DNA from: Anthoceros angustus
Lineage: Eukaryota; Plantae; Anthocerotophyta
Assembly: GCA_010909165.1 (NCBI GenBank)
Contig: MU008173.1
Coordinates: forward strand, 868,001-932,000
DNA: 64,000 bases
Direction of reading: 5' to 3'
Shown here: positions 2,144-14,099 of the stretch, in pieces
Layout: each line of letters begins with the position of its first letter
How positions within the stretch are numbered: the first letter of the stretch is position 1
Notes under the pieces: model-generated
Database searches by the model: none
Told to the model about the DNA's origin: nothing
The model's input: only the letters and a program-made list of their open reading frames with translations
Position numbers and translations under genes: made by a program

Positions 2144-3037
2144 CGCTGGTTGGAGTGTCCACAGGACATCACAAAATAAAAAAAGGGTGAAACTTCTGAA
2201 GGTCCCAAACGGCATGCTATAGCCGACTTCTGGGGCTGTTGGGTTGGAAATCGGATGTTGCTATCGACAGTCGGACACGAGCCGACCTCCAGACCCCGCC
2301 CCTTCCCACACGCCCGCATGCAGGACCACACGGTGCCCGAACCGCCTGGCCGCCACATGGGCGCCACGACAGCCCTAGACTGCCACGTCGGATTTAAGGC
2401 GTTGACATTCGATAAATATAGCTGCACGGGTACAGCCTGGATGGTGGTCCGAGGCGGTATCCGGGCCGAGTCACCCGTGTCGGGGAATTCGCCATCGACC
2501 GGTTAGTTTCAGATATGAGAGCCGCAATCCGCGATGGCGGCAAGCCAGCGAAACAACGTACTTAAGCCACTCCGCGCAATCACTTGCTCCTCACCGGCCT
2601 CCCACGTCTGTTCAGGAGAATTCGGGGTGTCGGGGGACAGGCTTCGCCAGTCTCGATCTCGCCAGCATCCAGAAGCTTCTGGAAGCGCGTTTCCGTCTTG
2701 TGGTACGCTTGATGCTTTGCATCGATGGATGCCTTGTCTTGCATTGCATTGCCTTGCCTTGCACATTGCATGGCTTTAAATTGCGTTGGTGGAGAATCGT
2801 GCTTGTGGAAATGGTCGCGAATAAGTTGTGTCGTGTGTCGCATCTGTGTCGCATCTTGTGTCGAACTGTTGAGAATTTACAGTGCCGGTGATGAAATATT
2901 GCTGATCAAGCGTAATACGACGATGTGCGGTGTTCTGAAGAGTTGTTTCTGGCAGGATTTTGTGTTGCATTGGATTGGAAAGGGCTAGTGTGGAGGAGGC
3001 AGAGGTAGAGAAGGTTTTTTTTTTTGTGAGCGAGGAC

Positions 3038-4717
3038 ATGGCTCGGAAGATGTGGAGGCTGCTCTTGGTCCTATCGGTCCTGCTCTTGTCTGTGAGCTGG
3101 ACAAGTGTGGTGAAAGCTGAAGAGGAAGGTGAAGCTCCTGAGCCTGGAGTCGAGCCGGAGGATGAAAGTAAGTTTGTGCACGTCGATGCTGGGAGCTCGG
3201 TCATTGCAAGGCCAAGTCTGTGAAACCGGGATTTAAAATTTCCAAATTGTTTGTTTTGGTGAGCAGAGTGGACCTGGTGTGTGACGGACACGAGCGACAA
3301 GCCAACTTGCGACGCGATGGTCAAGCTTCTTCAAGCTCTTGATCCGGAGGAGGAGCACGTTCACTCGTGGTTCGTTTTTTTTCTTGTAGGAATCTTGATT
3401 GTTTGTTTTCGAGATGGAATGTAAGACGATGGCTGAAACTGAATGGAACGGTGACGTGCTTGTGCAGTATCGTGGGGGCTGGAGACGAAGACTGCATGAA
3501 GAAGGTCCAAAGCGGCGAGGCAAAGTTCGTAGTCCTGGACGGCGGTGAGATCTGGGAAGCCAGCAATGAGTACGGGCTGAAGCCTATCCGCACAGAGGTT
3601 TCACAACTGGAGGGGAGCTACTACGGCGTGGGAATCGTGAAGAAAGGCAAGTGCCCGGGAAGCCTGGCTGACTTGAAGGGCAAGCGGTCCTGCCACACTG
3701 GCTACAACAGAGCCACCGGATGGGTGTTCCCTGTCACTTACCTTGTCGACAACAAGATCATGCCCGTTGTCACCAAGTAAGCTTCAGGACTTCATGCCTC
3801 TTGCACATTCAAAAGCAGATGATTTCAGGACTTGTAACTGCTGGAACAGACATACAGTGGCATGGAAAGGAATTCCTAAAGGTAGGTGCTAATGGCCGGG
3901 GCTTTGTGGCAGGGGTCCTCAATCCAACGACATCGAGTCTGTGAAGGCCTTTTTCAAGGCATCCTGTGCTGCCAACTCCGATCCCAACAAGGAGATCTGT
4001 TCGGCTTGCAAGATCAAGACCGCCTGCACCAAGTCTGACCCCTACTACGACTACGAGGGGGCTTTCAGGGGCTTGGTAGAGGACGCCTGCGATGTGGCCT
4101 TCACCAAGCACACCATAGTAGGCCAGTATGCCATGGGAGGAAGGTCTGCAGCGGCCGACTGGACCGGCCTGCAGGACGCAACCAACTATCAGATTCTGTG
4201 CCCTAACAAATACAACGGGCAGGTGTGCACTGATTCCGGCAACTACAAGTCTTGCAATTTCGGCCAAGCCCCTGGCCACGCTATCCTGGTGGCCAAGGAC
4301 TATCCGGACTTCGAGATCAACGAGTTCAACAATGTCATGAATGCAGCCAACTCCGACCCTGACTTCATCAGCTTGTTATTTTCTGGTAAGCTTGCTGCAT
4401 CTTGCGCACAACCATACATATATATATACACAATATTTTCTAAAATACATGTATCCGCAATGTGTGTCTAACGCTGGAATTTCAACTCCCTCGTATGGCC
4501 AGGAAACAACAAGGAGGGACACATCTTCGCTGCAGACGCAACCAGGACTGTAGCATACACTGGAACCACCCAGGCCCTTCTTGGAAACTTCTACAAGAAC
4601 ATCCAGGATCTGGAGAGCATCAACGCCCAAAAGACCGACACTGGCAGTGGAACCAGGGCTGCCTCTTCAATCTTCTTGTCATTGGCTCTTGGTCTCCTGT
4701 ATGTGTTGTTTCAGTAG
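3038..4717 (+). CDS. Single-lobe transferrin-family protein (~409 aa), secreted and probably GPI-anchored; exons 3038-3167, 3267-3369, 3468-3776, 3913-4385, 4503-4717
   Basis: All four introns are GT-AG and phase-compatible (1230 nt total). Signal peptide MARKMWRLLLVLSVLLLSVSWTSVVKA. Transferrin motifs: WTWCV, DCMKKVQSGEAKFVVLDGG, YYGVGIVKK, LKGKRSCHTGYNRATGW, YYDYEGAFRGL, DVAFTKH, YQILCP, CNFGQAPGHA. C-terminus SGTRAASSIFLSLALGLLYVLFQ*. Confidence 0.92.
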
Positions 4718-5259
4718 GATTACTGATAGAATTAGTCACTCTGATGTCGAAGACTGGCCTGTGGTTGCGTCGTGGGCATCTGTCCTGCCCGTCCTGTCTT
4801 CACACTGGGCGGGCAGCGGGCTCCATTGTTTTGAGAGGTCCAACTCCGAGTGGGTTTGTAAAAGGCTTGTACCATTTTAGAGAAAAAACATTCAAAGACG
4901 TGCGTTCACTCAGGATTCCTTCCAGAGCTGGACTTAAGCAGAAGTGGACGCCATTGACAAATTGAAGCGTTTTTGGTGGGGAGGATTGGGAGAGAGAAAC
5001 AGACGGCCGTCTCAGCTGAATCTAGCTCAGGTCTGCTTTGTGAATGAGGTGAAGAGGCCATCTCCGCACGACGTTGCAGTCGATTCCTTTCATGGTTTCC
5101 ATGGATACTCAGGGCTGGTGAGCACCCAAGGCTTGTGGGCTTATGTTGTGTGCACTGGTGCAAGCTCAGGTCCGGTGGCATGGAATTGGAATCCCTCGAA
5201 ACAAGCCAGCAGTAGTTCCGGCTGTGGAGGGGTCAATCGGGTAATAAGAAAGCATTCTT

Positions 5260-7633
5260 GCCATCTGGCCTACCTGCAAGGCAGACTCATGAAACCTTCC
5301 TGCCAGCGTTGTTTTATCACTCTGGCCATCTGGCCTCAATTCACCTCAATAAAGTGGTCTCACGCACAGAACTCCCCAATCGGAGTCAAGCGTGCCCCAA
5401 CTCGGGGACGACACCATAGGCCACAGCCATTCCATCTTCCTACTTCGTAATCGATTCCGTAGACCACAGCCATCACATCTTCCTACTCTATAATATTTAT
5501 GCGTTATGTCATGTTTAATCCGGTGGGTTCCGTGGCTGGTTAGAGCTGAGTTGGTGGACAAGGCTGGTGTTGGTTTGAAATGAGGCATTGACAGGGTTGT
5601 GTTTTACCTGGTGCTTGCAGAATTCTCCTTGAGCCTTGGTTCCTGAAGTCTGTCTTCACATTAGAGGTAGGCAAGTTTGAGGTTTCGGAGCCTCTTTGAG
5701 TCTAGGTGTTTTCGAGATCCCTATTCTGGACTTTGGGCCTTCTGGGTTTCTACAGCCTTCAGGACAAAAAGGGTTCTCAGCTAGTGTGAGAGCACACCCA
5801 CTTGTGATGTACGTAGCCTGTTCCATATGACATCATGATACAGGACGTTGTTTTCAAGGATGGAATTTCAAATCTAGTGGATCAGTCTGTGGTCTAAGCG
5901 TTAAAACAAAGTGCAATCGAAGATTGCATGGGGCTGATGAGGACGGGAACCGGTTGATTCTCTTGTATCACAGGGAATTGCTGGGGATATAAAGGAAGAA
6001 ACCTGAAAACCATTCAGGGCTCCATGTCTGGCCATCCGTAGTCTGCAGGCAGCGGCGCTGTTGTTGGTGCTGTTCCATGCGAATGGCTGTTAATCATGGT
6101 TGGATTCTCTGCGTCCCCTGATTCTCCTGCGTCTCCTGATGGTTGGATTTGCACGTCGTGGCCTTTGTACGTAGTGGGTCGTACTGGAAAACCAGAGTGG
6201 CAGGGACGAAGGACAGGTCTGGCATTAATGGGCAAAGAAGAGGGGTATCTTCAAGAGCTGAGGTTTTGTCAGTCTTGAACGGGGCCTTCAATCTGTGGAT
6301 GCCGGTGGGAATTTCTGCTCATCAGGGTGATGCAGTGAGCAATCTTCCGATGGTTGTGTGCACTCTGTAGCCCGTTTGGTAGATTAGCTGCCTTATTTCC
6401 GTCTAAGTGTTGAGCTGAAGCTAAACTGCCAATTTGAAGCTGAAAGTCATCTGTGGAAATTTGGAGAAGATGTAGCAGTGAGTGCTAATCTTCACGGATG
6501 AGCTTGTAGCATTCCCTAAGCACATGGACTGATGAGGAACTGATGGCGTTGATGAAAGCCGGCCCTCGCCCACTCCAAGCCATAGCAATCAGAGGGTGAA
6601 GGCACCGCTGAAAAATAGCTGCAATTCCAGAAGCAAAACGAAGCTGCAGCTATGTTTAGACCCTGGAGTGCAGACAACCATGTACCATAAAAGTACTCTG
6701 TACTCTTGTACTTGCCTGGTGGGGAGTAAAGTTGGATTGGATTGCAGCAGAGAGAGACTTTCATCATGCTTGATCAGGAGGTTACAGCAAGATTACCGGT
6801 GTGATGTGAATGCTGACGGTGGCTGGTAGAAACGGACAATTGCATGGGCCATTCCACAGTTTTCCATGTGTCGGACTGGGATCTGTCTTCTACGCCCAAC
6901 TTCCAGGAGGACAAGAAATCGCGGTAAAGATAAGGGCAGACTCATCTCGGTCTTTTCGGAGACTTAGTTTGCCAACGAGCTAGGGTACTTGGCTCAAGAT
7001 CGTCTTCATGTGTTCTACCTGTGCAACTTCGTGCTTGGCTTCAACCTGTTTTATTCAATCTGACGATACCCATGGTCCCGTTCTGTGTCTGAAAGTGAGT
7101 TTGCTCTCTGGAGTCCACCATCCAAATCTTATGACACTTCTGGGCTGTTGCGAAGAAGCTGGCAAGCAGGGTCTTGTCTATGATTTGATCCCAGTGAAAA
7201 GATTCGCTAAATCAGACTGAAATTGTAGGGCCGCAAGCTGGCTGGGATAAAACATCTGGACTCGAAGGCGAGGTGGAGAGTAGCAATCACTGGGGCGGCA
7301 TCAGGTATTCCTGTTAAATGTTTTTGGTCAGTCTGAACGGTAGACCCTTTGTACATGATGTGACGGAGCAGCAATATCCTCCTAGAAGCCAACATGGGAT
7401 TAAGGGTGTGTGATTTTGGTTTGTCTAGGCTGGTCGTAAACGCAGACGCTACCATGACCCCGGGTAAGCAACTAAGCAAGCCAGAAACTTTGCTCCTCCT
7501 GCCATACCCTGCCCCCCGCCTCCGCAGGCTCATGAAGTCTTCCTGCCAACGTTGTGTCATCATTCTGGCCATCTGGCCTCCCTGCAGGGCAGGCTCAATG
7601 ATCGTTGGGGCCATCTGGCCTCCCTACAAGGCA
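5260..7633. repeat. Short arrays of a ~64 bp unit at 5260-5338 and 7524-7633 flanking the RLK relic
   Basis: The unit gccatctggcctccctgcaaggcaggctcatgaagtcttcctgccaacgttgtgtcatcattctg occurs in the same orientation at both sites. Confidence 0.75.
5750..7480 (+). pseudogene. Decayed receptor-like kinase (LRR-I/malectin-LRR-like) pseudogene; left boundary uncertain
   Basis: Kinase remnants occur in order across residual introns: GLGSVFYAQLPGGQEIAVKIRADSSR (I-II, ~6875-6950), VSLLSGVHHPNLMTLLGCCEE..QGLVYDLIP (IV-V), HLDSKARWRVAITGAASG, VHDVTSSNILLEANMGLRVCDFGLSRL (VIb-VII). The HRD arginine is lost, there are frameshifts, and the kinase is truncated after VII. Confidence 0.75.
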
Positions 7634-10801: not shown

Positions 10802-13800
10802 TCATTGGAAGTTATTCACCAAGTTCTGCAACGCAGCTTCAAGGTCTTCCTTCTTTATCCTCGCCTCTTCTACATCCTGCACAGCATTCATTCCAAAGGA
10901 GATAAGGCTTTGCTTGCCCAGCATTGCACCGACAGTAACGGCATCTGCATCTGCATCCGCATCCGCATCAGCATCAGCATCAGCATCAGGATCAAGATGA
11001 GCCGGGAAGGCTTACCGTGATGTGAATCATGTGGTAGGCAGTCCTGCTGTTGGTGGACTTCTGGGCGTTGAGGACCCGGAATCTGAGGCTCTCCAGCAGG
11101 AGGAGAGTCCTGGAGAAGAGCTGAAGGCTGCCCCGAAGGCAAGTGAGAGTGATGAAAGCCTCGCCCCCGCACATGTCCAGAGTGAAAACTGGCGTGAAGG
11201 GCTGCAGTTCCTGGCCCTCCTGCTTGTCCCACTGTTGGACGCCACCTGCAGCGTCCTTGTGATCTTGGCTCTCGGGGGACGAACAAGGCCCAGAGCTTTT
11301 GCACAGGTCTGTGGAGCTTCCGGAGTTCACGAGCCTGTTGGAGGGGTAGATCTTCGTCTTGTAGGCTGCAAACACGTTGTGGGAGCCTCGAAGCAGCTTT
11401 TGAGCCACTGTCAGCTCTGTTTTCTTTTGCGCCAGCTGCTTCAGAGACTGCTGCATTCCCTCAATGTAGCTGATGGTCTCTGCCACGATTTTCAGTCTGT
11501 CCGAGGGCTGCACAAAATAACATAACATGCAAGTGAAACAACGTTACTCCTTGCCCCCCTCCGAGCTACAAGCTTCACAACACAAGACAAATCGCACAAC
11601 GCAAAGATGCAACAGTGTGAGACTCAGCTTGTTTGCCATGAGCAGTACCTTGGGATTCAGCCCGTCCGCCGGCAGCAACGATCCCAACGTCGACAGCATG
11701 CAGTTCATACTCTTCCGCCTTCTCCTTTCCGCTATAACGTGGCTTTCCCGCTCCGAAGAAGGCGATTGCTTGACAGGGCGAGCTGGCTCCGCTTGAGCCA
11801 CAGCAATGGCACGAGCTGCAGCTTGGGACGCTTTACAAGTCCTGGCCTTCTTGGCTGCAGGCTGCTTGCCAGGCCCAGGCCCAGCCTCTGCCATGACAGG
11901 AGAGGAGTTGGCGTCGCCTCCGGATCCCCGACTTCCTCGTCTCCTCTTGCCAGCAAGGCCCGGTTTCACATCCAACCCCGCGGGAGACGAAGCTTCAACA
12001 CCAGCCACTGCTCGCAGGACCTGAGTCGTGATTTTGTCACTGCAGTTGGAGGCCAGCGGCCCTCTCCTCTGCGGAACCTCCGCCACAGTGACTGCAGCGT
12101 GGCCAGCCACGCGGTTCTTGGCCGCACCGGATGGCCGAATATCAGGGCTGGGAGTGCCCGGTGGAAGAGGAATGGAGCCCGGCGAGCTCTTGCAATCCTC
12201 CCTCAGGCTGGCGCTAGGGCCGGGTTGCCCCAAGACAGAAGCCGCTGCAGCAGGGGTCGCCGCCGGAGAGCATGACTTCCTGGACGCCCGGGGCGAGGGC
12301 GAGGGACTGCCTGACAGCGCCTGCGCCTGCACGCTCCTCCTTCTCTTGGTCGGAGGAGGAGACAATTTTCCGAAAGACATGGAAGTGGGAGACGGCTCCT
12401 CCAAACAGGCCTCCTTCCCCGGGCCCGCGCCCGGCCTGCCGGCAGAGGGAACTTCACAGTCTGCAGCACGGGCCCGCTTCATCCCTGCACTCGGCAGCTG
12501 CTGCAAATTTCCATTCCCCGGGCCCGGAAGCAGGCTCCCAGCCTGCGCATGCTGCTGCAGCTGCTGCTGCTGATGCTGATGCTCCTGGCCTTGGAGTTGG
12601 CCTTGCAATTGCAATTGCAATTTCGCTTGCACTTGCTCGGAGTTGGAGGCAGTCACGGTGACGTGATCACACTGATGGGAGGAGAGCTGAGCATCGGTGC
12701 CGAACTTGAGCCCGTCGTCCTCAACCTTCTTGGAGTCGCTGCCTACCTCCATGGACCTCCTGTCATCTGAGGCCTCATTGGGGCTGCAGAGCTGAGCAAA
12801 ATCAGCCACGCTGTGGCTCCGGGACTGGCTCTCCATCATCAAGCAGGATTCCAACACGGTGACCGGAGACCCCATGGATTGGAACCCTTCCAGCGACGAA
12901 ATATGGTCGGAGGCGGAAGACAAGTAGCCCGTCCCTGCCGTCTTGCAACCGAGCTCGGATCCGACGTTGGACGAAAGCACGGAGGTGGAGACTCCGACTC
13001 CGCCTCCGCAGTCGTGGCTGTGCTCCCCGTCCGGCAGCTCCAAGAGCGGCCACTGGTGGAAGCAGAAATCTCCGAGCTGCAAGTCATCCGCCGCGCTGGT
13101 GTCCACCAGAGACTGGCTCTGCATGTTGCCCGCCTCATCCAGCTCCTCCACGTTGAGCGGCCATTGCGAGGAGGCGGAGAGAGCCTCCTCCCAGCCGCGG
13201 GAAGGCGAGCAGGGATGGAGGATCTCGGAACCGAGCTCTTCCCCCTGGTTGCGCAATTCCTCAGCCAAGCGCATCGAGACATTGGCCGAGGGGAATGCTC
13301 CTGCTCCTGCTCCGGCTCCAGAAGAGAAGAAATTCAAGCCGTGGTGATGATCATTCTGCGAATCCGTCTTCATCCCTTGGCTGCAGAAGGGCAGGCTCTG
13401 CCCGAAGTGCGCCTCCTGGCCGGAAGAATAGTGCAGCTGCGCCGGGCCTCCCCAGCGTGCAAGAGCCTCCGACATTGTCCTCGGCGGGCCGAGAATGCTT
13501 CCCGGGGCGGCTGCCGCTGCCAGAGCCGGAGCTTGCTGCCATTGCGAGGAGGAAGAGAGGTAGGAGCGGGAGGGGGAGAAGCCGAGCGGCAAAGGCAGGG
13601 AGGCAGCGGGCAATTGCGGGAGGCCGCAGGGCGGGGCAGCCCCGGCGGGCGAGGCGCAGGGAGGGCGGCAGGAAGGCGCGAGATTGAGCGATGCCAGGAG
13701 CAGGGGCGAGGCGGAGGACAAATCGATGGAGGCAGGGGATCCGGAAGAGGAGGGTCCGCTGGCCAGGAGCTGGTGCCGGTGCTGGTGGAGGCTGCGATCC

Positions 13801-13955
13801 AGACCTTGCAGGACGTGGACGTCGGGGAGCAGTGGCGAGCGCAGGAGATGCTGGTGTTGTTGCTGCTGCTGCTGCTGCGAGGCCGAGTGAGAGTGTGAGT
13901 GTGAGTGCGAGTGCGCGGACGTGGGGGGCAGCAAGAGCGACGCGGGCGCGGCCAT
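10802..13955 (-). CDS. bHLH transcription factor with C-terminal ACT-like domain, ZHOUPI/bHLH95 (subfamily Ib)-like, ~957 aa; exons 13955-11649, 11507-11016, 10876-10802
   Basis: bHLH SHVIAERRRRKSMNCMLSTLGSLLPADGLNPK|PSDRLKIVAETISYIEGMQQSLKQLAQKK. ACT-like FTLDMCGGEAFITLTC...LFSRTLLLLESLRFRVLNAQKSTNSRTAYHMIHIT resembles the ZOU C-terminus. Introns are phase 0 GT-AG. Confidence 0.85.
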
Positions 13956-14099
13956 GGCCACGCTCTTTTCCCGCTTCGCTCTCGTCTGGGTCTGGCTCGG
14001 CTCGGAATGAGCTACACGCCGGCCACTTCTTCTGCCTTTGTATTTGCCCCTGCGTCTCCTCTCTCTTCAATTCACCACCTGACTGTCAGCAAGGTGTGA

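What the first reader, a model, noticed from the sequence alone, without database searches (positions are those of the whole stretch)
3038..4717. Monolobal, probably GPI-anchored true transferrin in a land plant, with all Fe/carbonate ligands intact
Seen in sequence: a clean 5-exon ORF encoding a signal peptide, an acidic EEEGEAPEPGVEPEDE linker and one transferrin lobe. It ends in a small-residue omega-like region (TGSG), a spacer and a hydrophobic tail with no cytosolic domain. Positions equivalent to human transferrin N-lobe Asp63 (LDGG), Tyr95 (YYG), Tyr188 (YYDYEGAF) and His249 (PGHA), and the anion site Thr120/Arg124 (CHTGYNR), are all present. Established: vertebrate transferrins are bilobal, melanotransferrin is GPI-anchored, Dunaliella has membrane transferrins, and scattered plant homologues exist but are largely uncharacterised. 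Inference: a cell-surface Fe(III)-carbonate capture or sequestration system distinct from Strategy I/II uptake and from ISIP2A/FEA1 phytotransferrins. It may matter for iron uptake or for iron control toward microbial symbionts.
Basis: partly seen in the sequence, partly recalled or inferred. Interest (0 to 1): 0.8.

Follow-up and report, generated by a model that had tools for sequence, protein, structure and literature searches.

The report
Single-lobe membrane transferrin gene in a bryophyte
This is a real, expressed plant gene for a one-lobe transferrin with every iron- and carbonate-binding residue intact and a probable lipid anchor. It belongs to an annotated family that nobody has studied, found in non-flowering land plants and their closest algae.

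Summary
A five-exon gene (3038-4717, +) has four GT..AG introns, and spliced contigs from two related organisms show exactly those joints, including exon 4 to exon 5. Exons 3 and 4 hit Pfam Transferrin (E 2e-20 and 1e-18). Asp, Tyr, Tyr, His and the anion pair Thr/Arg all align to the ligand positions of solved transferrins.

The N-terminus looks like a signal peptide. The C-terminus looks like a GPI signal (small residues GSG, a short spacer, a 15-residue hydrophobic end, no cytosolic residues). This rests on rules only, because no GPI predictor was available.

The gene is not unique. Collinear single-lobe orthologues (47-59% identity) are annotated in Marchantia, Ceratodon, Physcomitrium (decayed), Selaginella, Adiantum and Ginkgo, and in the algae Spirogloea and Mesotaenium. 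In a maximum-likelihood tree the land-plant copies form one clade (100/100), sister to zygnematophyte copies and apart from animal transferrins. This fits vertical inheritance. No angiosperm name was seen.

I found no paper on the function of these plant proteins. The scan has noted two further transferrin loci on other pieces of this genome.

The most likely role is Fe(III)-carbonate capture at the cell surface; uptake versus withholding is open. The joined spliced protein was not built, searched or folded.

The parts
2956..3037 (+). 5' untranslated part of the first coding exon. A probable 5'-UTR intron ends at 2955.
   Evidence: Spliced contigs of X1 and X2 stop matching the window at 2956 and 2955, just after a CAG, and run on as unlike letters (tables 7 and 8). 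There is no ATG between 2956 and 3038. The donor was not placed.
3038..3118 (+). Signal peptide, 27 residues (MARKMWR, then a Leu/Val/Ser core, then VKA).
   Evidence: Translation. The hydropathy peak is 3.4 over residues 8-17, and small residues sit at -3/-1 (V-K-A) before EEE. This is a rule-based reading; no SignalP was available.
3119..3167 (+). Acidic linker EEEGEAPEPGVEPEDE, to the end of exon 1 (phase 1).
   Evidence: Relatives carry an extra GAG after 3121. L001 has PEPGVTPKDE at the same place. Selaginella and Spirogloea have Asp-rich stretches there.
3267..3369 (+). Exon 2: start of the lobe (KWTWCV...), with the first two conserved Cys.
   Evidence: Joints 3167>3267 and 3369>3468. 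Aligns to the WxWCV start of the orthologues. The split codon TG|T at the exon 2/3 joint reads Cys, on a conserved Cys column.
3468..3776 (+). Exon 3: Asp ligand (3538-3540), first Tyr ligand (3619-3621), anion-site Thr (3697-3699) and Arg (3709-3711).
   Evidence: PF00405 2.3e-20, profile positions 37-127. Alignments to 2d3i, 1aiv and 6xr0. Ligand table.
3913..4385 (+). Exon 4: second Tyr ligand (4052-4054), His ligand (4277-4279), eight Cys, and the Lys206 equivalent.
   Evidence: PF00405 1.3e-18, profile positions 142-256. Alignments. Tables.
4503..4642 (+). Exon 5, first part: the C-terminal helices that close the lobe. Ala stands at the Lys296 position.
   Evidence: Joint 4385>4503. Collinear with the orthologues. 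The matching part of the Selaginella model is helical and lies within the match to whole N-lobes. Lys296 column.
4643..4717 (+). GPI-signal-like end: candidate omega Gly (4643-4645) in GSG, spacer TRAASS, hydrophobic IFLSLALGLLYVLFQ (4670-4714), stop 4715-4717.
   Evidence: The same layout is found in all complete land-plant orthologues checked and in bat melanotransferrin (control). It is absent from TM-type protist copies and from serum transferrin. DNA contigs of X19 and X20 hold an in-frame CTC insertion after 4693.

Best explanation
The gene encodes a secreted, single-lobe transferrin held on the outer face of the plasma membrane, most likely by a GPI anchor added at the GSG site after the C-terminal hydrophobic peptide is removed.

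The lobe would close over one Fe(III) ion. The ion would be bound by Asp, two Tyr and His, together with a carbonate held by Thr and Arg, as in animal transferrin lobes. It lacks the second Lys of the serum-transferrin pH trigger, so iron release probably works differently.

The gene belongs to an old streptophyte lineage of transferrins inherited from the algal ancestors of land plants. This lineage has been kept, with its ligands, in bryophytes, lycophytes, ferns and Ginkgo.

By analogy with the membrane transferrins of green algae, its most likely job is to capture ferric iron at the cell surface for uptake.

Shown: gene structure, splicing, family, ligands, clade. Inferred: GPI anchoring, metal binding, role in uptake.
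For: - **Splicing.** All four introns are seen as joints in contigs of two related organisms.
- **Family.** PF00405 hits exons 3 and 4. The best solved relatives are melanotransferrin and ovotransferrin, with all six binding residues aligned.
- **Ligand conservation.** Complete land-plant orthologues keep D-Y-T/S-R-Y-H, while zygnematophyte copies have lost two to four of them. This points to selection on metal binding in land plants (for six orthologues; by reading for Marchantia).
- **Cysteines.** 13 of 14 conserved Cys columns are kept. The fourteenth is shifted by six columns, as it is in the mosses.
- **Coding constraint.** Third-codon bias of the differences and in-frame indels.
- **Fold.** The Selaginella orthologue (55% identical to the window's exons) folds with pLDDT 89. 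It matches whole iron-loaded N-lobes 1iej and 1a8e at TM 0.78-0.80, better than open apo forms at 0.64-0.67.
- **Anchor.** The GPI-like end is shared across orthologues although its sequence differs.
- **Tree.** Land plants 100/100, with Spirogloea 96/92, with Mesotaenium 93/92, animals apart 100/97.
- **Analogy.** Algal membrane transferrins are induced by iron lack and linked to uptake (PMC10372677).
Against: - No metal-binding, localisation or iron-responsive expression data exist for this or any land-plant orthologue in the library searched.
- GPI anchoring rests on a home-made rule check, not on a trained predictor or an experiment.
- A 15-residue hydrophobic end could in principle act as a short membrane anchor.
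- From general knowledge, plant cell walls are acidic (about pH 5-6), a range where serum transferrin lets iron go. Binding in that compartment is therefore not assured.
- The structure was predicted for an orthologue, not for this protein.
- The RNA nature of runs X1 and X2 is a guess by the tool, although spliced contigs support it.
Confidence: 0.6

Rival explanations
1. The protein binds iron at the cell surface or in mucilage to withhold it from microbes or to control symbionts, as lactoferrin, ovotransferrin and insect transferrin 1 do. It does not feed the plant cell.
For: The ligand set is intact. The second Lys of the acid-release trigger is missing, which from general knowledge goes with tighter iron retention at low pH. 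The genome holds several copies, as immune gene families often do. The genome is probably a hornwort's (inference; note s1-701612), and hornworts house cyanobacteria.
Against: The closest characterised non-animal relatives, the algal membrane transferrins, serve uptake (PMC10372677). A membrane tether suits capture for the cell more than diffuse withholding. No expression data under infection or symbiosis were available.
Confidence: 0.2
2. The transferrin fold has been put to a use other than iron: another ligand, or a structural or signalling role as a surface glycoprotein. Precedents are saxiphilin, the inhibitor of carbonic anhydrase, and insect GPI-linked transferrin 2 in cell junctions.
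For: Transferrin lobes have often changed function, and zygnematophyte copies of this very clade have lost ligands. GPI proteins of plants often act in the cell wall (general knowledge).
Against: All six binding residues are kept in this gene and in every complete land-plant orthologue checked, over more than 400 million years (Marchantia by reading). Family members that changed function have usually lost them (for example the melanotransferrin C-lobe and Lingula rows).
Confidence: 0.1
3. The protein is a normal iron-binding lobe but is not GPI-anchored. The hydrophobic end stays as a short membrane helix, or the protein is simply secreted or sent to the vacuole.
For: No predictor or experiment supports the anchor. 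The AF2 model of the orthologue shows the end as a helix. C-terminal hydrophobic peptides can also be sorting signals (general knowledge).
Against: The hydrophobic stretch is only 15 residues, with nothing after it and no basic flank. It is preceded by a small-residue site at the right distance. The same rule picks out melanotransferrin and rejects TM-type and soluble transferrins. The layout is conserved while the sequence is not.
Confidence: 0.25

Closest known systems
Uncharacterised land-plant 'transferrin-like domain-containing proteins': Marchantia polymorpha MPTK1_5g14940 (P0253), Selaginella moellendorffii 'serotransferrin' (P0159), Ceratodon KC19_11G130300 (P0160), Ginkgo Gb_31199 (P0152), Adiantum (P0014, P0158)
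   Same: These are orthologues. All have about 400 residues, a signal peptide, one lobe, the same ligands, the same Cys pattern and a GPI-like end. They are 49-57% identical over the aligned exons and form one clade at 100/100 (Marchantia was not in the tree).
   Different: Only details differ: the Glu/Pro-rich linker here, Thr where mosses and the liverwort have Ser at the anion site, and a Cys shifted by six columns, shared with the bryophyte copies but not with the vascular plants. None has a published function in the library searched.
Algal membrane transferrins (Dunaliella TTf/TFN family; the multi-lobe proteins of Bryopsis and Caulerpa)
   Same: Same non-animal branch of the family (with Bryopsis and Caulerpa standing in). 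They are cell-surface proteins with a signal peptide and with ligands kept in the active lobes. Iron-lack induction and an uptake role are reported for Dunaliella (PMC10372677).
   Different: The algal proteins have one to ten lobes and a transmembrane helix. This gene has one lobe and a GPI-like end with no cytosolic tail. Most algal lobes have Lys where this gene, like animals, has Arg at the anion site. Dunaliella sequences themselves were not compared here.
Melanotransferrin (MELTF, p97, CD228)
   Same: Best solved match by sequence (6xr0). It is GPI-anchored and sits on the cell surface. Its N-lobe has the same six residues. It has been proposed to carry out transferrin-independent iron uptake (PMC13213057, abstract only).
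   Different: Melanotransferrin has two lobes and is an animal protein on the other side of the tree (100/97). The likeness in anchoring is therefore convergent or very old; it is not orthology.
Serum transferrin / ovotransferrin N-lobe
   Same: Same fold: the orthologue model matches 1iej and 1a8e at TM 0.78-0.80. Same ligands and anion site, and the Lys206 equivalent is kept.
   Different: Those proteins are soluble, have two lobes and are taken up through a receptor. This gene has Ala at the Lys296 position, so it has no dilysine trigger.
Phytotransferrin ISIP2a / FEA1
   Same: The proposed job is the same: carbonate-dependent Fe(III) capture at the surface of a photosynthetic cell (general knowledge of McQuaid et al. 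2018; not read here).
   Different: It is a different protein family. This gene is PF00405, and no other iron-uptake family was hit.

Membership tests
Transferrin family (Pfam PF00405) | Profile match above the curated cut-off | tested here: met
   Exon 3 scores 73.5 bits and exon 4 scores 67.7 bits, against a cut-off of 20.3.
Transferrin family (Pfam PF00405) | Four iron ligands: Asp, Tyr, Tyr, His | tested here: met
   Aligned to Asp60, Tyr92, Tyr191 and His250 of ovotransferrin, and to the melanotransferrin N-lobe. The column table also lists macaque transferrin.
Transferrin family (Pfam PF00405) | Synergistic-anion site: Thr and Arg in CHTGxxR | tested here: met
   CHTGYNR aligns to CHTGLGR.
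Transferrin family (Pfam PF00405) | Complete two-subdomain lobe fold | tested here: met
   The window's exons 2-5 align end to end with the orthologues. The Selaginella orthologue model (pLDDT 89.2) covers whole N-lobes at TM 0.78-0.80. The window's own joined protein was not folded.
Transferrin family (Pfam PF00405) | Conserved disulfide cysteines | tested here: met
   13 of 14 conserved Cys columns are kept, one of them through the split codon at the exon 2/3 joint. One is shifted by six columns, as in the mosses.
Transferrin family (Pfam PF00405) | Carbonate-dependent Fe(III) binding | not testable with these tools
   Needs recombinant protein and spectroscopy.
GPI-anchored proteins | N-terminal signal peptide | tested here: met
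   Basic start, 12-residue hydrophobic core, and V-K-A before the acidic stretch. Rule-based only.
GPI-anchored proteins | C-terminal signal: small omega and omega+2 residues, polar spacer, hydrophobic end, nothing beyond it | tested here: inconclusive
   G-S-G, TRAASS and a 15-residue hydrophobic end fit a home-made rule. The rule accepts melanotransferrin and rejects TM-type and soluble transferrins. No trained predictor was available.
GPI-anchored proteins | Anchor actually attached | not testable with these tools
   Needs PI-PLC release or mass spectrometry.
Melanotransferrin | Two lobes; groups with animal melanotransferrins | tested here: not met
   One lobe only. The animal lobes form the other side of a 100/97 branch.
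Algal membrane transferrins (Dunaliella type) | Transmembrane helix with a cytosolic tail | tested here: not met
   Nothing follows the hydrophobic end, whereas TM-type relatives carry a charged tail.
Algal membrane transferrins (Dunaliella type) | Induced by iron lack | not tested
   No run with a stated iron treatment was available. Reads were laid on splicing.
Phytotransferrin ISIP2a / FEA1 | Belongs to that sequence family | tested here: not met
   The only hits with E below 0.001 were PF00405 and the related PF12974.

The most novel reading that the evidence does not exclude
Early land plants inherited from their algal ancestors a third route of iron acquisition, besides reduction and phytosiderophores. 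In this route a lipid-anchored single-lobe transferrin captures Fe(III) with carbonate at the cell surface and delivers it by endocytosis. The route survives in bryophytes, lycophytes, ferns and Ginkgo and was lost on the way to flowering plants.
Probability: 0.3. Interest if true: 0.75.

Novelty: new member of a known kind. Interest (0 to 1): 0.5.

Why it matters
Accounts of plant iron nutrition describe two uptake strategies and treat transferrin as an animal protein, with some algal examples. This gene, together with its orthologues in Marchantia, mosses, Selaginella, ferns and Ginkgo, shows otherwise. Non-flowering land plants have kept a ligand-intact, surface-tethered transferrin since before they came onto land.

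Several of these plants can be transformed, so the question of what the protein does for iron uptake or for dealing with microbes can be tested directly. The loss in flowering plants, if it is confirmed, would mark a change in how plants acquire iron.

Tried and rejected
- **Word search with exon 4 alone**. It found only one fragment, because full-length relatives fall outside the length window.
- **Profile word search**. It missed Marchantia and Physcomitrium, so I first took the family to be absent there. A search with the moss protein corrected this.
- **The window's own protein and its near-identical relatives.** They are not in the protein collections, so no reference to the full-length protein exists. 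SignalP- or NetGPI-like checks were replaced by rules applied to exon 1 and exon 5 separately, and the fold was predicted for the Selaginella orthologue.
- **Recent transfer from animals.** Rejected: the plant copies lie with algal copies, and their branching follows the species tree.
- **Pseudogene or annotation artefact.** Rejected by the splicing evidence, third-codon bias and in-frame indels.
- **Second copy in the window.** None was found.
- **Iron-related neighbours within about 10 kb.** Only a bHLH gene was recognised.
- **Papers.** Ten searches found no functional study of a land-plant transferrin. Bai et al. 2016 (pmid 26655280) is not held in the library.
- **Species.** It could not be named, because run and organism names are coded.

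Full report
**What is in the sequence.**
Reading 2400-5400 and checking the splice sites by script gives a five-exon gene on the + strand. The exons are 3038-3167, 3267-3369, 3468-3776, 3913-4385 and 4503-4717, in all 1230 nt (409 codons and TAG). The four introns are 99, 98, 136 and 117 nt long and all are GT..AG. They are poorer in G+C (0.39-0.47) than the exons (0.51-0.57). The first ATG after 2956 is at 3038.

**Is it transcribed and spliced as read?**
One search for sequencing runs found 23 runs of three coded organisms. They hold a fifth to a quarter of the sampled words, which suggests close relatives and not the source strain. Laying four of them on 2950-4950 gave these results:
- Runs X1 and X2, which the tool guesses to be RNA, hold contigs with exactly the four predicted joints: 3167>3267, 3369>3468, 3776>3913 and 4385>4503.
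- Runs X19 and X20 hold the introns, as DNA would.
- Exon pieces differ from the window by about 1-3%, and intron pieces by about 9-13% (table 8).
- The listed indels in the coding part are multiples of three: AGC after 3094, GAG after 3121, CTC after 4693.
- Of the 18 coding differences printed, 14 are at third codon positions (p 1.4e-4).

Exon 5 is joined to exon 4 in two organisms.

**What family is it?**
Each exon was searched by reference. The joined protein was not built, searched or folded.
- Pfam Transferrin (PF00405) matches exon 3 (E 2.3e-20, profile positions 37-127) and exon 4 (E 1.3e-18, positions 142-256). The only other hit with E below 0.001 is the related periplasmic-binding family PF12974.
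- Against solved structures the best match of both exons is human melanotransferrin 6xr0, followed by ovotransferrins.
- Counting along the printed ovotransferrin alignments puts the window's Asp (LDGG) on Asp60, the first Tyr of SYYG on Tyr92, and CHTGYNR on Thr117 and Arg121. The last Tyr of YYDY falls on Tyr191 and the His of PGHA on His250.
- A 48-row alignment gives the same result against both lobes of macaque transferrin.
- 13 of 14 conserved cysteine columns are kept. The fourteenth is moved six columns along, as in the moss copies.
- The Lys206 equivalent is present, but the Lys296 position is Ala. The dilysine acid trigger of serum transferrin N-lobes is therefore absent.

**The two ends.**
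Exon 1 starts with a basic stretch and a hydrophobic core, ends that part with V-K-A, and then runs into the acidic stretch EEEGEAPEPGVEPEDE. Exon 5 ends in TDTGSGTRAASS followed by IFLSLALGLLYVLFQ and the stop codon.

I wrote a simple rule for a GPI signal: small residues at omega and omega+2, 5-14 residues before the hydrophobic core, and the core at the very end of the protein. The rule accepts the window, all complete land-plant orthologues checked, the Spirogloea copies and bat melanotransferrin as a known positive. It rejects serum transferrin and the protist copies that have a transmembrane helix plus a charged tail. This is a layout check, not a trained predictor. GPI anchoring remains probable, not shown.

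**Relatives.**
The exhaustive profile-free search with exon 4 found only 288 clusters at E below 0.001 among 1.84 billion representatives. Look-ups and word searches named the closest ones.

| Organism | Protein | Note |
|---|---|---|
| Marchantia polymorpha | MPTK1_5g14940 (P0253) | 57% identity over the aligned exons |
| Marchantia polymorpha | 5g14910 | |
| Ceratodon purpureus | three clusters | about 50% identity |
| Physcomitrium patens | P0032 | 239-residue copy that has lost the His and Thr of the CHTG motif |
| Selaginella moellendorffii | P0159 | named 'serotransferrin' by RefSeq; 55% identity |
| Adiantum (two species) | P0014, P0158 | |
| Ginkgo biloba | P0152 | |
| Spirogloea, Mesotaenium (zygnematophyte algae) | | |
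| Bryopsis, Caulerpa (green seaweeds) | | seven-lobe and four-lobe proteins |

No angiosperm name appeared. Both searches scored only the 8000 candidates sharing the most words, so absence from angiosperms is indicated but not proven.

All complete land-plant proteins align end to end with the window's exons. They share the signal peptide, the single lobe and the GPI-like end. A genomic contig from another sample (L001) has the same five exons, with 77% identity in exon 3 and 66% in exon 4, and nearly the same linker.

**Ligands across the clade.**
Every complete land-plant orthologue keeps Asp, Tyr, Thr or Ser, Arg, Tyr and His. The zygnematophyte copies have lost two to four of these (Marchantia by reading). 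This pattern suggests that metal binding is what selection preserves in land plants.

**Tree.**
I built a careful maximum-likelihood tree of 61 lobes. Three long-branch rows were left out: Ischnura lobe 1, Caulerpa lobe 4 and P0039. The window was represented by exon 3 and exon 4 as separate rows. The support values are:

| Grouping | Support |
|---|---|
| Land-plant rows together | 100/100 |
| Land plants with Spirogloea | 96/92 |
| The above with Mesotaenium | 93/92 |
| Animal lobes on the other side | 100/97 |
| Exon 4 with the L001 protein | 99/90 |
| Exon 4 within a bryophyte group that includes Ceratodon | 97/88 |

The branching follows the species tree. The family was therefore inherited from streptophyte algae, not taken recently from animals.

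**Fold.**
The window's full protein has no reference, so I folded the Selaginella orthologue with the 48-row alignment. The model has mean pLDDT 89.2. It matches whole iron-loaded N-lobes (1iej, 1a8e and others) at TM 0.78-0.80 over about 350 columns. It matches open apo forms less well, at 0.64-0.67. The part that corresponds to exon 5 lies within that match. Exon 5 had no Pfam hit of its own.

**What it most likely does.**
Shown: the gene is expressed, it is a complete single transferrin lobe, it has all binding residues, it carries secretory and membrane-tether signals, and it belongs to an old, conserved plant lineage.

Inferred: one Fe(III) ion with carbonate is bound at the outer face of the cell. 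The closest studied non-animal relatives, the Dunaliella membrane transferrins, are strongly induced by iron lack and are thought to bind and internalise iron themselves (PMC10372677). A recent paper proposes that GPI-anchored melanotransferrin does the same in mammals (PMC13213057, abstract). I therefore rank capture for uptake first. Withholding iron from microbes comes second, and a non-iron role third.

A caveat from general knowledge is that the plant cell wall space is acidic. The missing Lys296 partner may matter there.

**Novelty.**
Ten paper searches found no study of a land-plant transferrin and no mention of the Marchantia gene identifiers. Bai et al. 2016 surveyed transferrins in plant genomes. 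A review cites it for two insect-like genes in cacao, and another paper cites it for the lack of a transferrin receptor in flowering plants. The paper itself is not held. Orthologues are annotated in public records.

This gene is thus a new member of a known family. What has not been described, as far as I could find, is the conserved single-lobe, GPI-like, ligand-intact form across non-flowering land plants. The scan has two more first-reader notes of transferrin loci on other pieces of this genome, which I did not check.

**Organism.**
The gene's place in the tree, the short introns and G+C near 0.5 fit a bryophyte. Another agent's note calls the genome 'probably a hornwort'. I could not test this, because organism names are coded.

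Noticed in passing
proteins P0095, P0115, P0139, P0147, P0080, P0061 (not in the window): Single-lobe transferrins of unnamed protists or metagenomes end in a transmembrane helix plus a short cytosolic tail with a shared motif R-E-K/R-x-G-x-P-x-F. This may be a sorting or endocytosis signal. The land-plant copies lack it.
   Followed up: no
window 11544-13961 (-): One long ORF of 805 residues with a helix-loop-helix DNA-binding domain at its end (PF00010, E 1.6e-5). It is the only recognisable neighbour within about 10 kb. No link to the transferrin gene was shown.
   Followed up: no
window about 2680-2955: Spliced contigs of X1 and X2 leave the window at 2955/2956, just after a CAG. The first ten of the printed loose letters of X2 match window 2683-2692. 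This suggests a 5'-UTR intron whose donor I could not place.
   Followed up: partly
window 3366-3467: X2 also holds a second joint, 3366>3467, with two extra letters between. It is either an alternative donor three bases upstream or assembly noise.
   Followed up: no
window 4691 onward: A contig of X1 (organism A) departs from the window at 4691, inside the codons of the hydrophobic tail, and runs on for 129 unlike letters. This could be a diverged 3' end or another splice form in that organism. It is unexplained.
   Followed up: no
L001:1400-3330: A genomic contig from sample SRR33208241 carries a collinear five-exon relative (exon 3 at 77%, exon 4 at 66% identity) with the same linker motif. 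It is probably an orthologue or paralogue in a related bryophyte.
   Followed up: partly
protein P0032 (Physcomitrium patens): The Physcomitrium copy has 239 residues, reads CLSRYGR where the others read CHTGYGR or CHSGYGR, and ends in unrelated sequence. It looks like a decaying gene or a poor gene model.
   Followed up: no
proteins P0253 and P0256 (Marchantia Mp5g14940 and Mp5g14910): Marchantia holds two transferrin genes three gene numbers apart. Local duplication seems common in this family.
   Followed up: no
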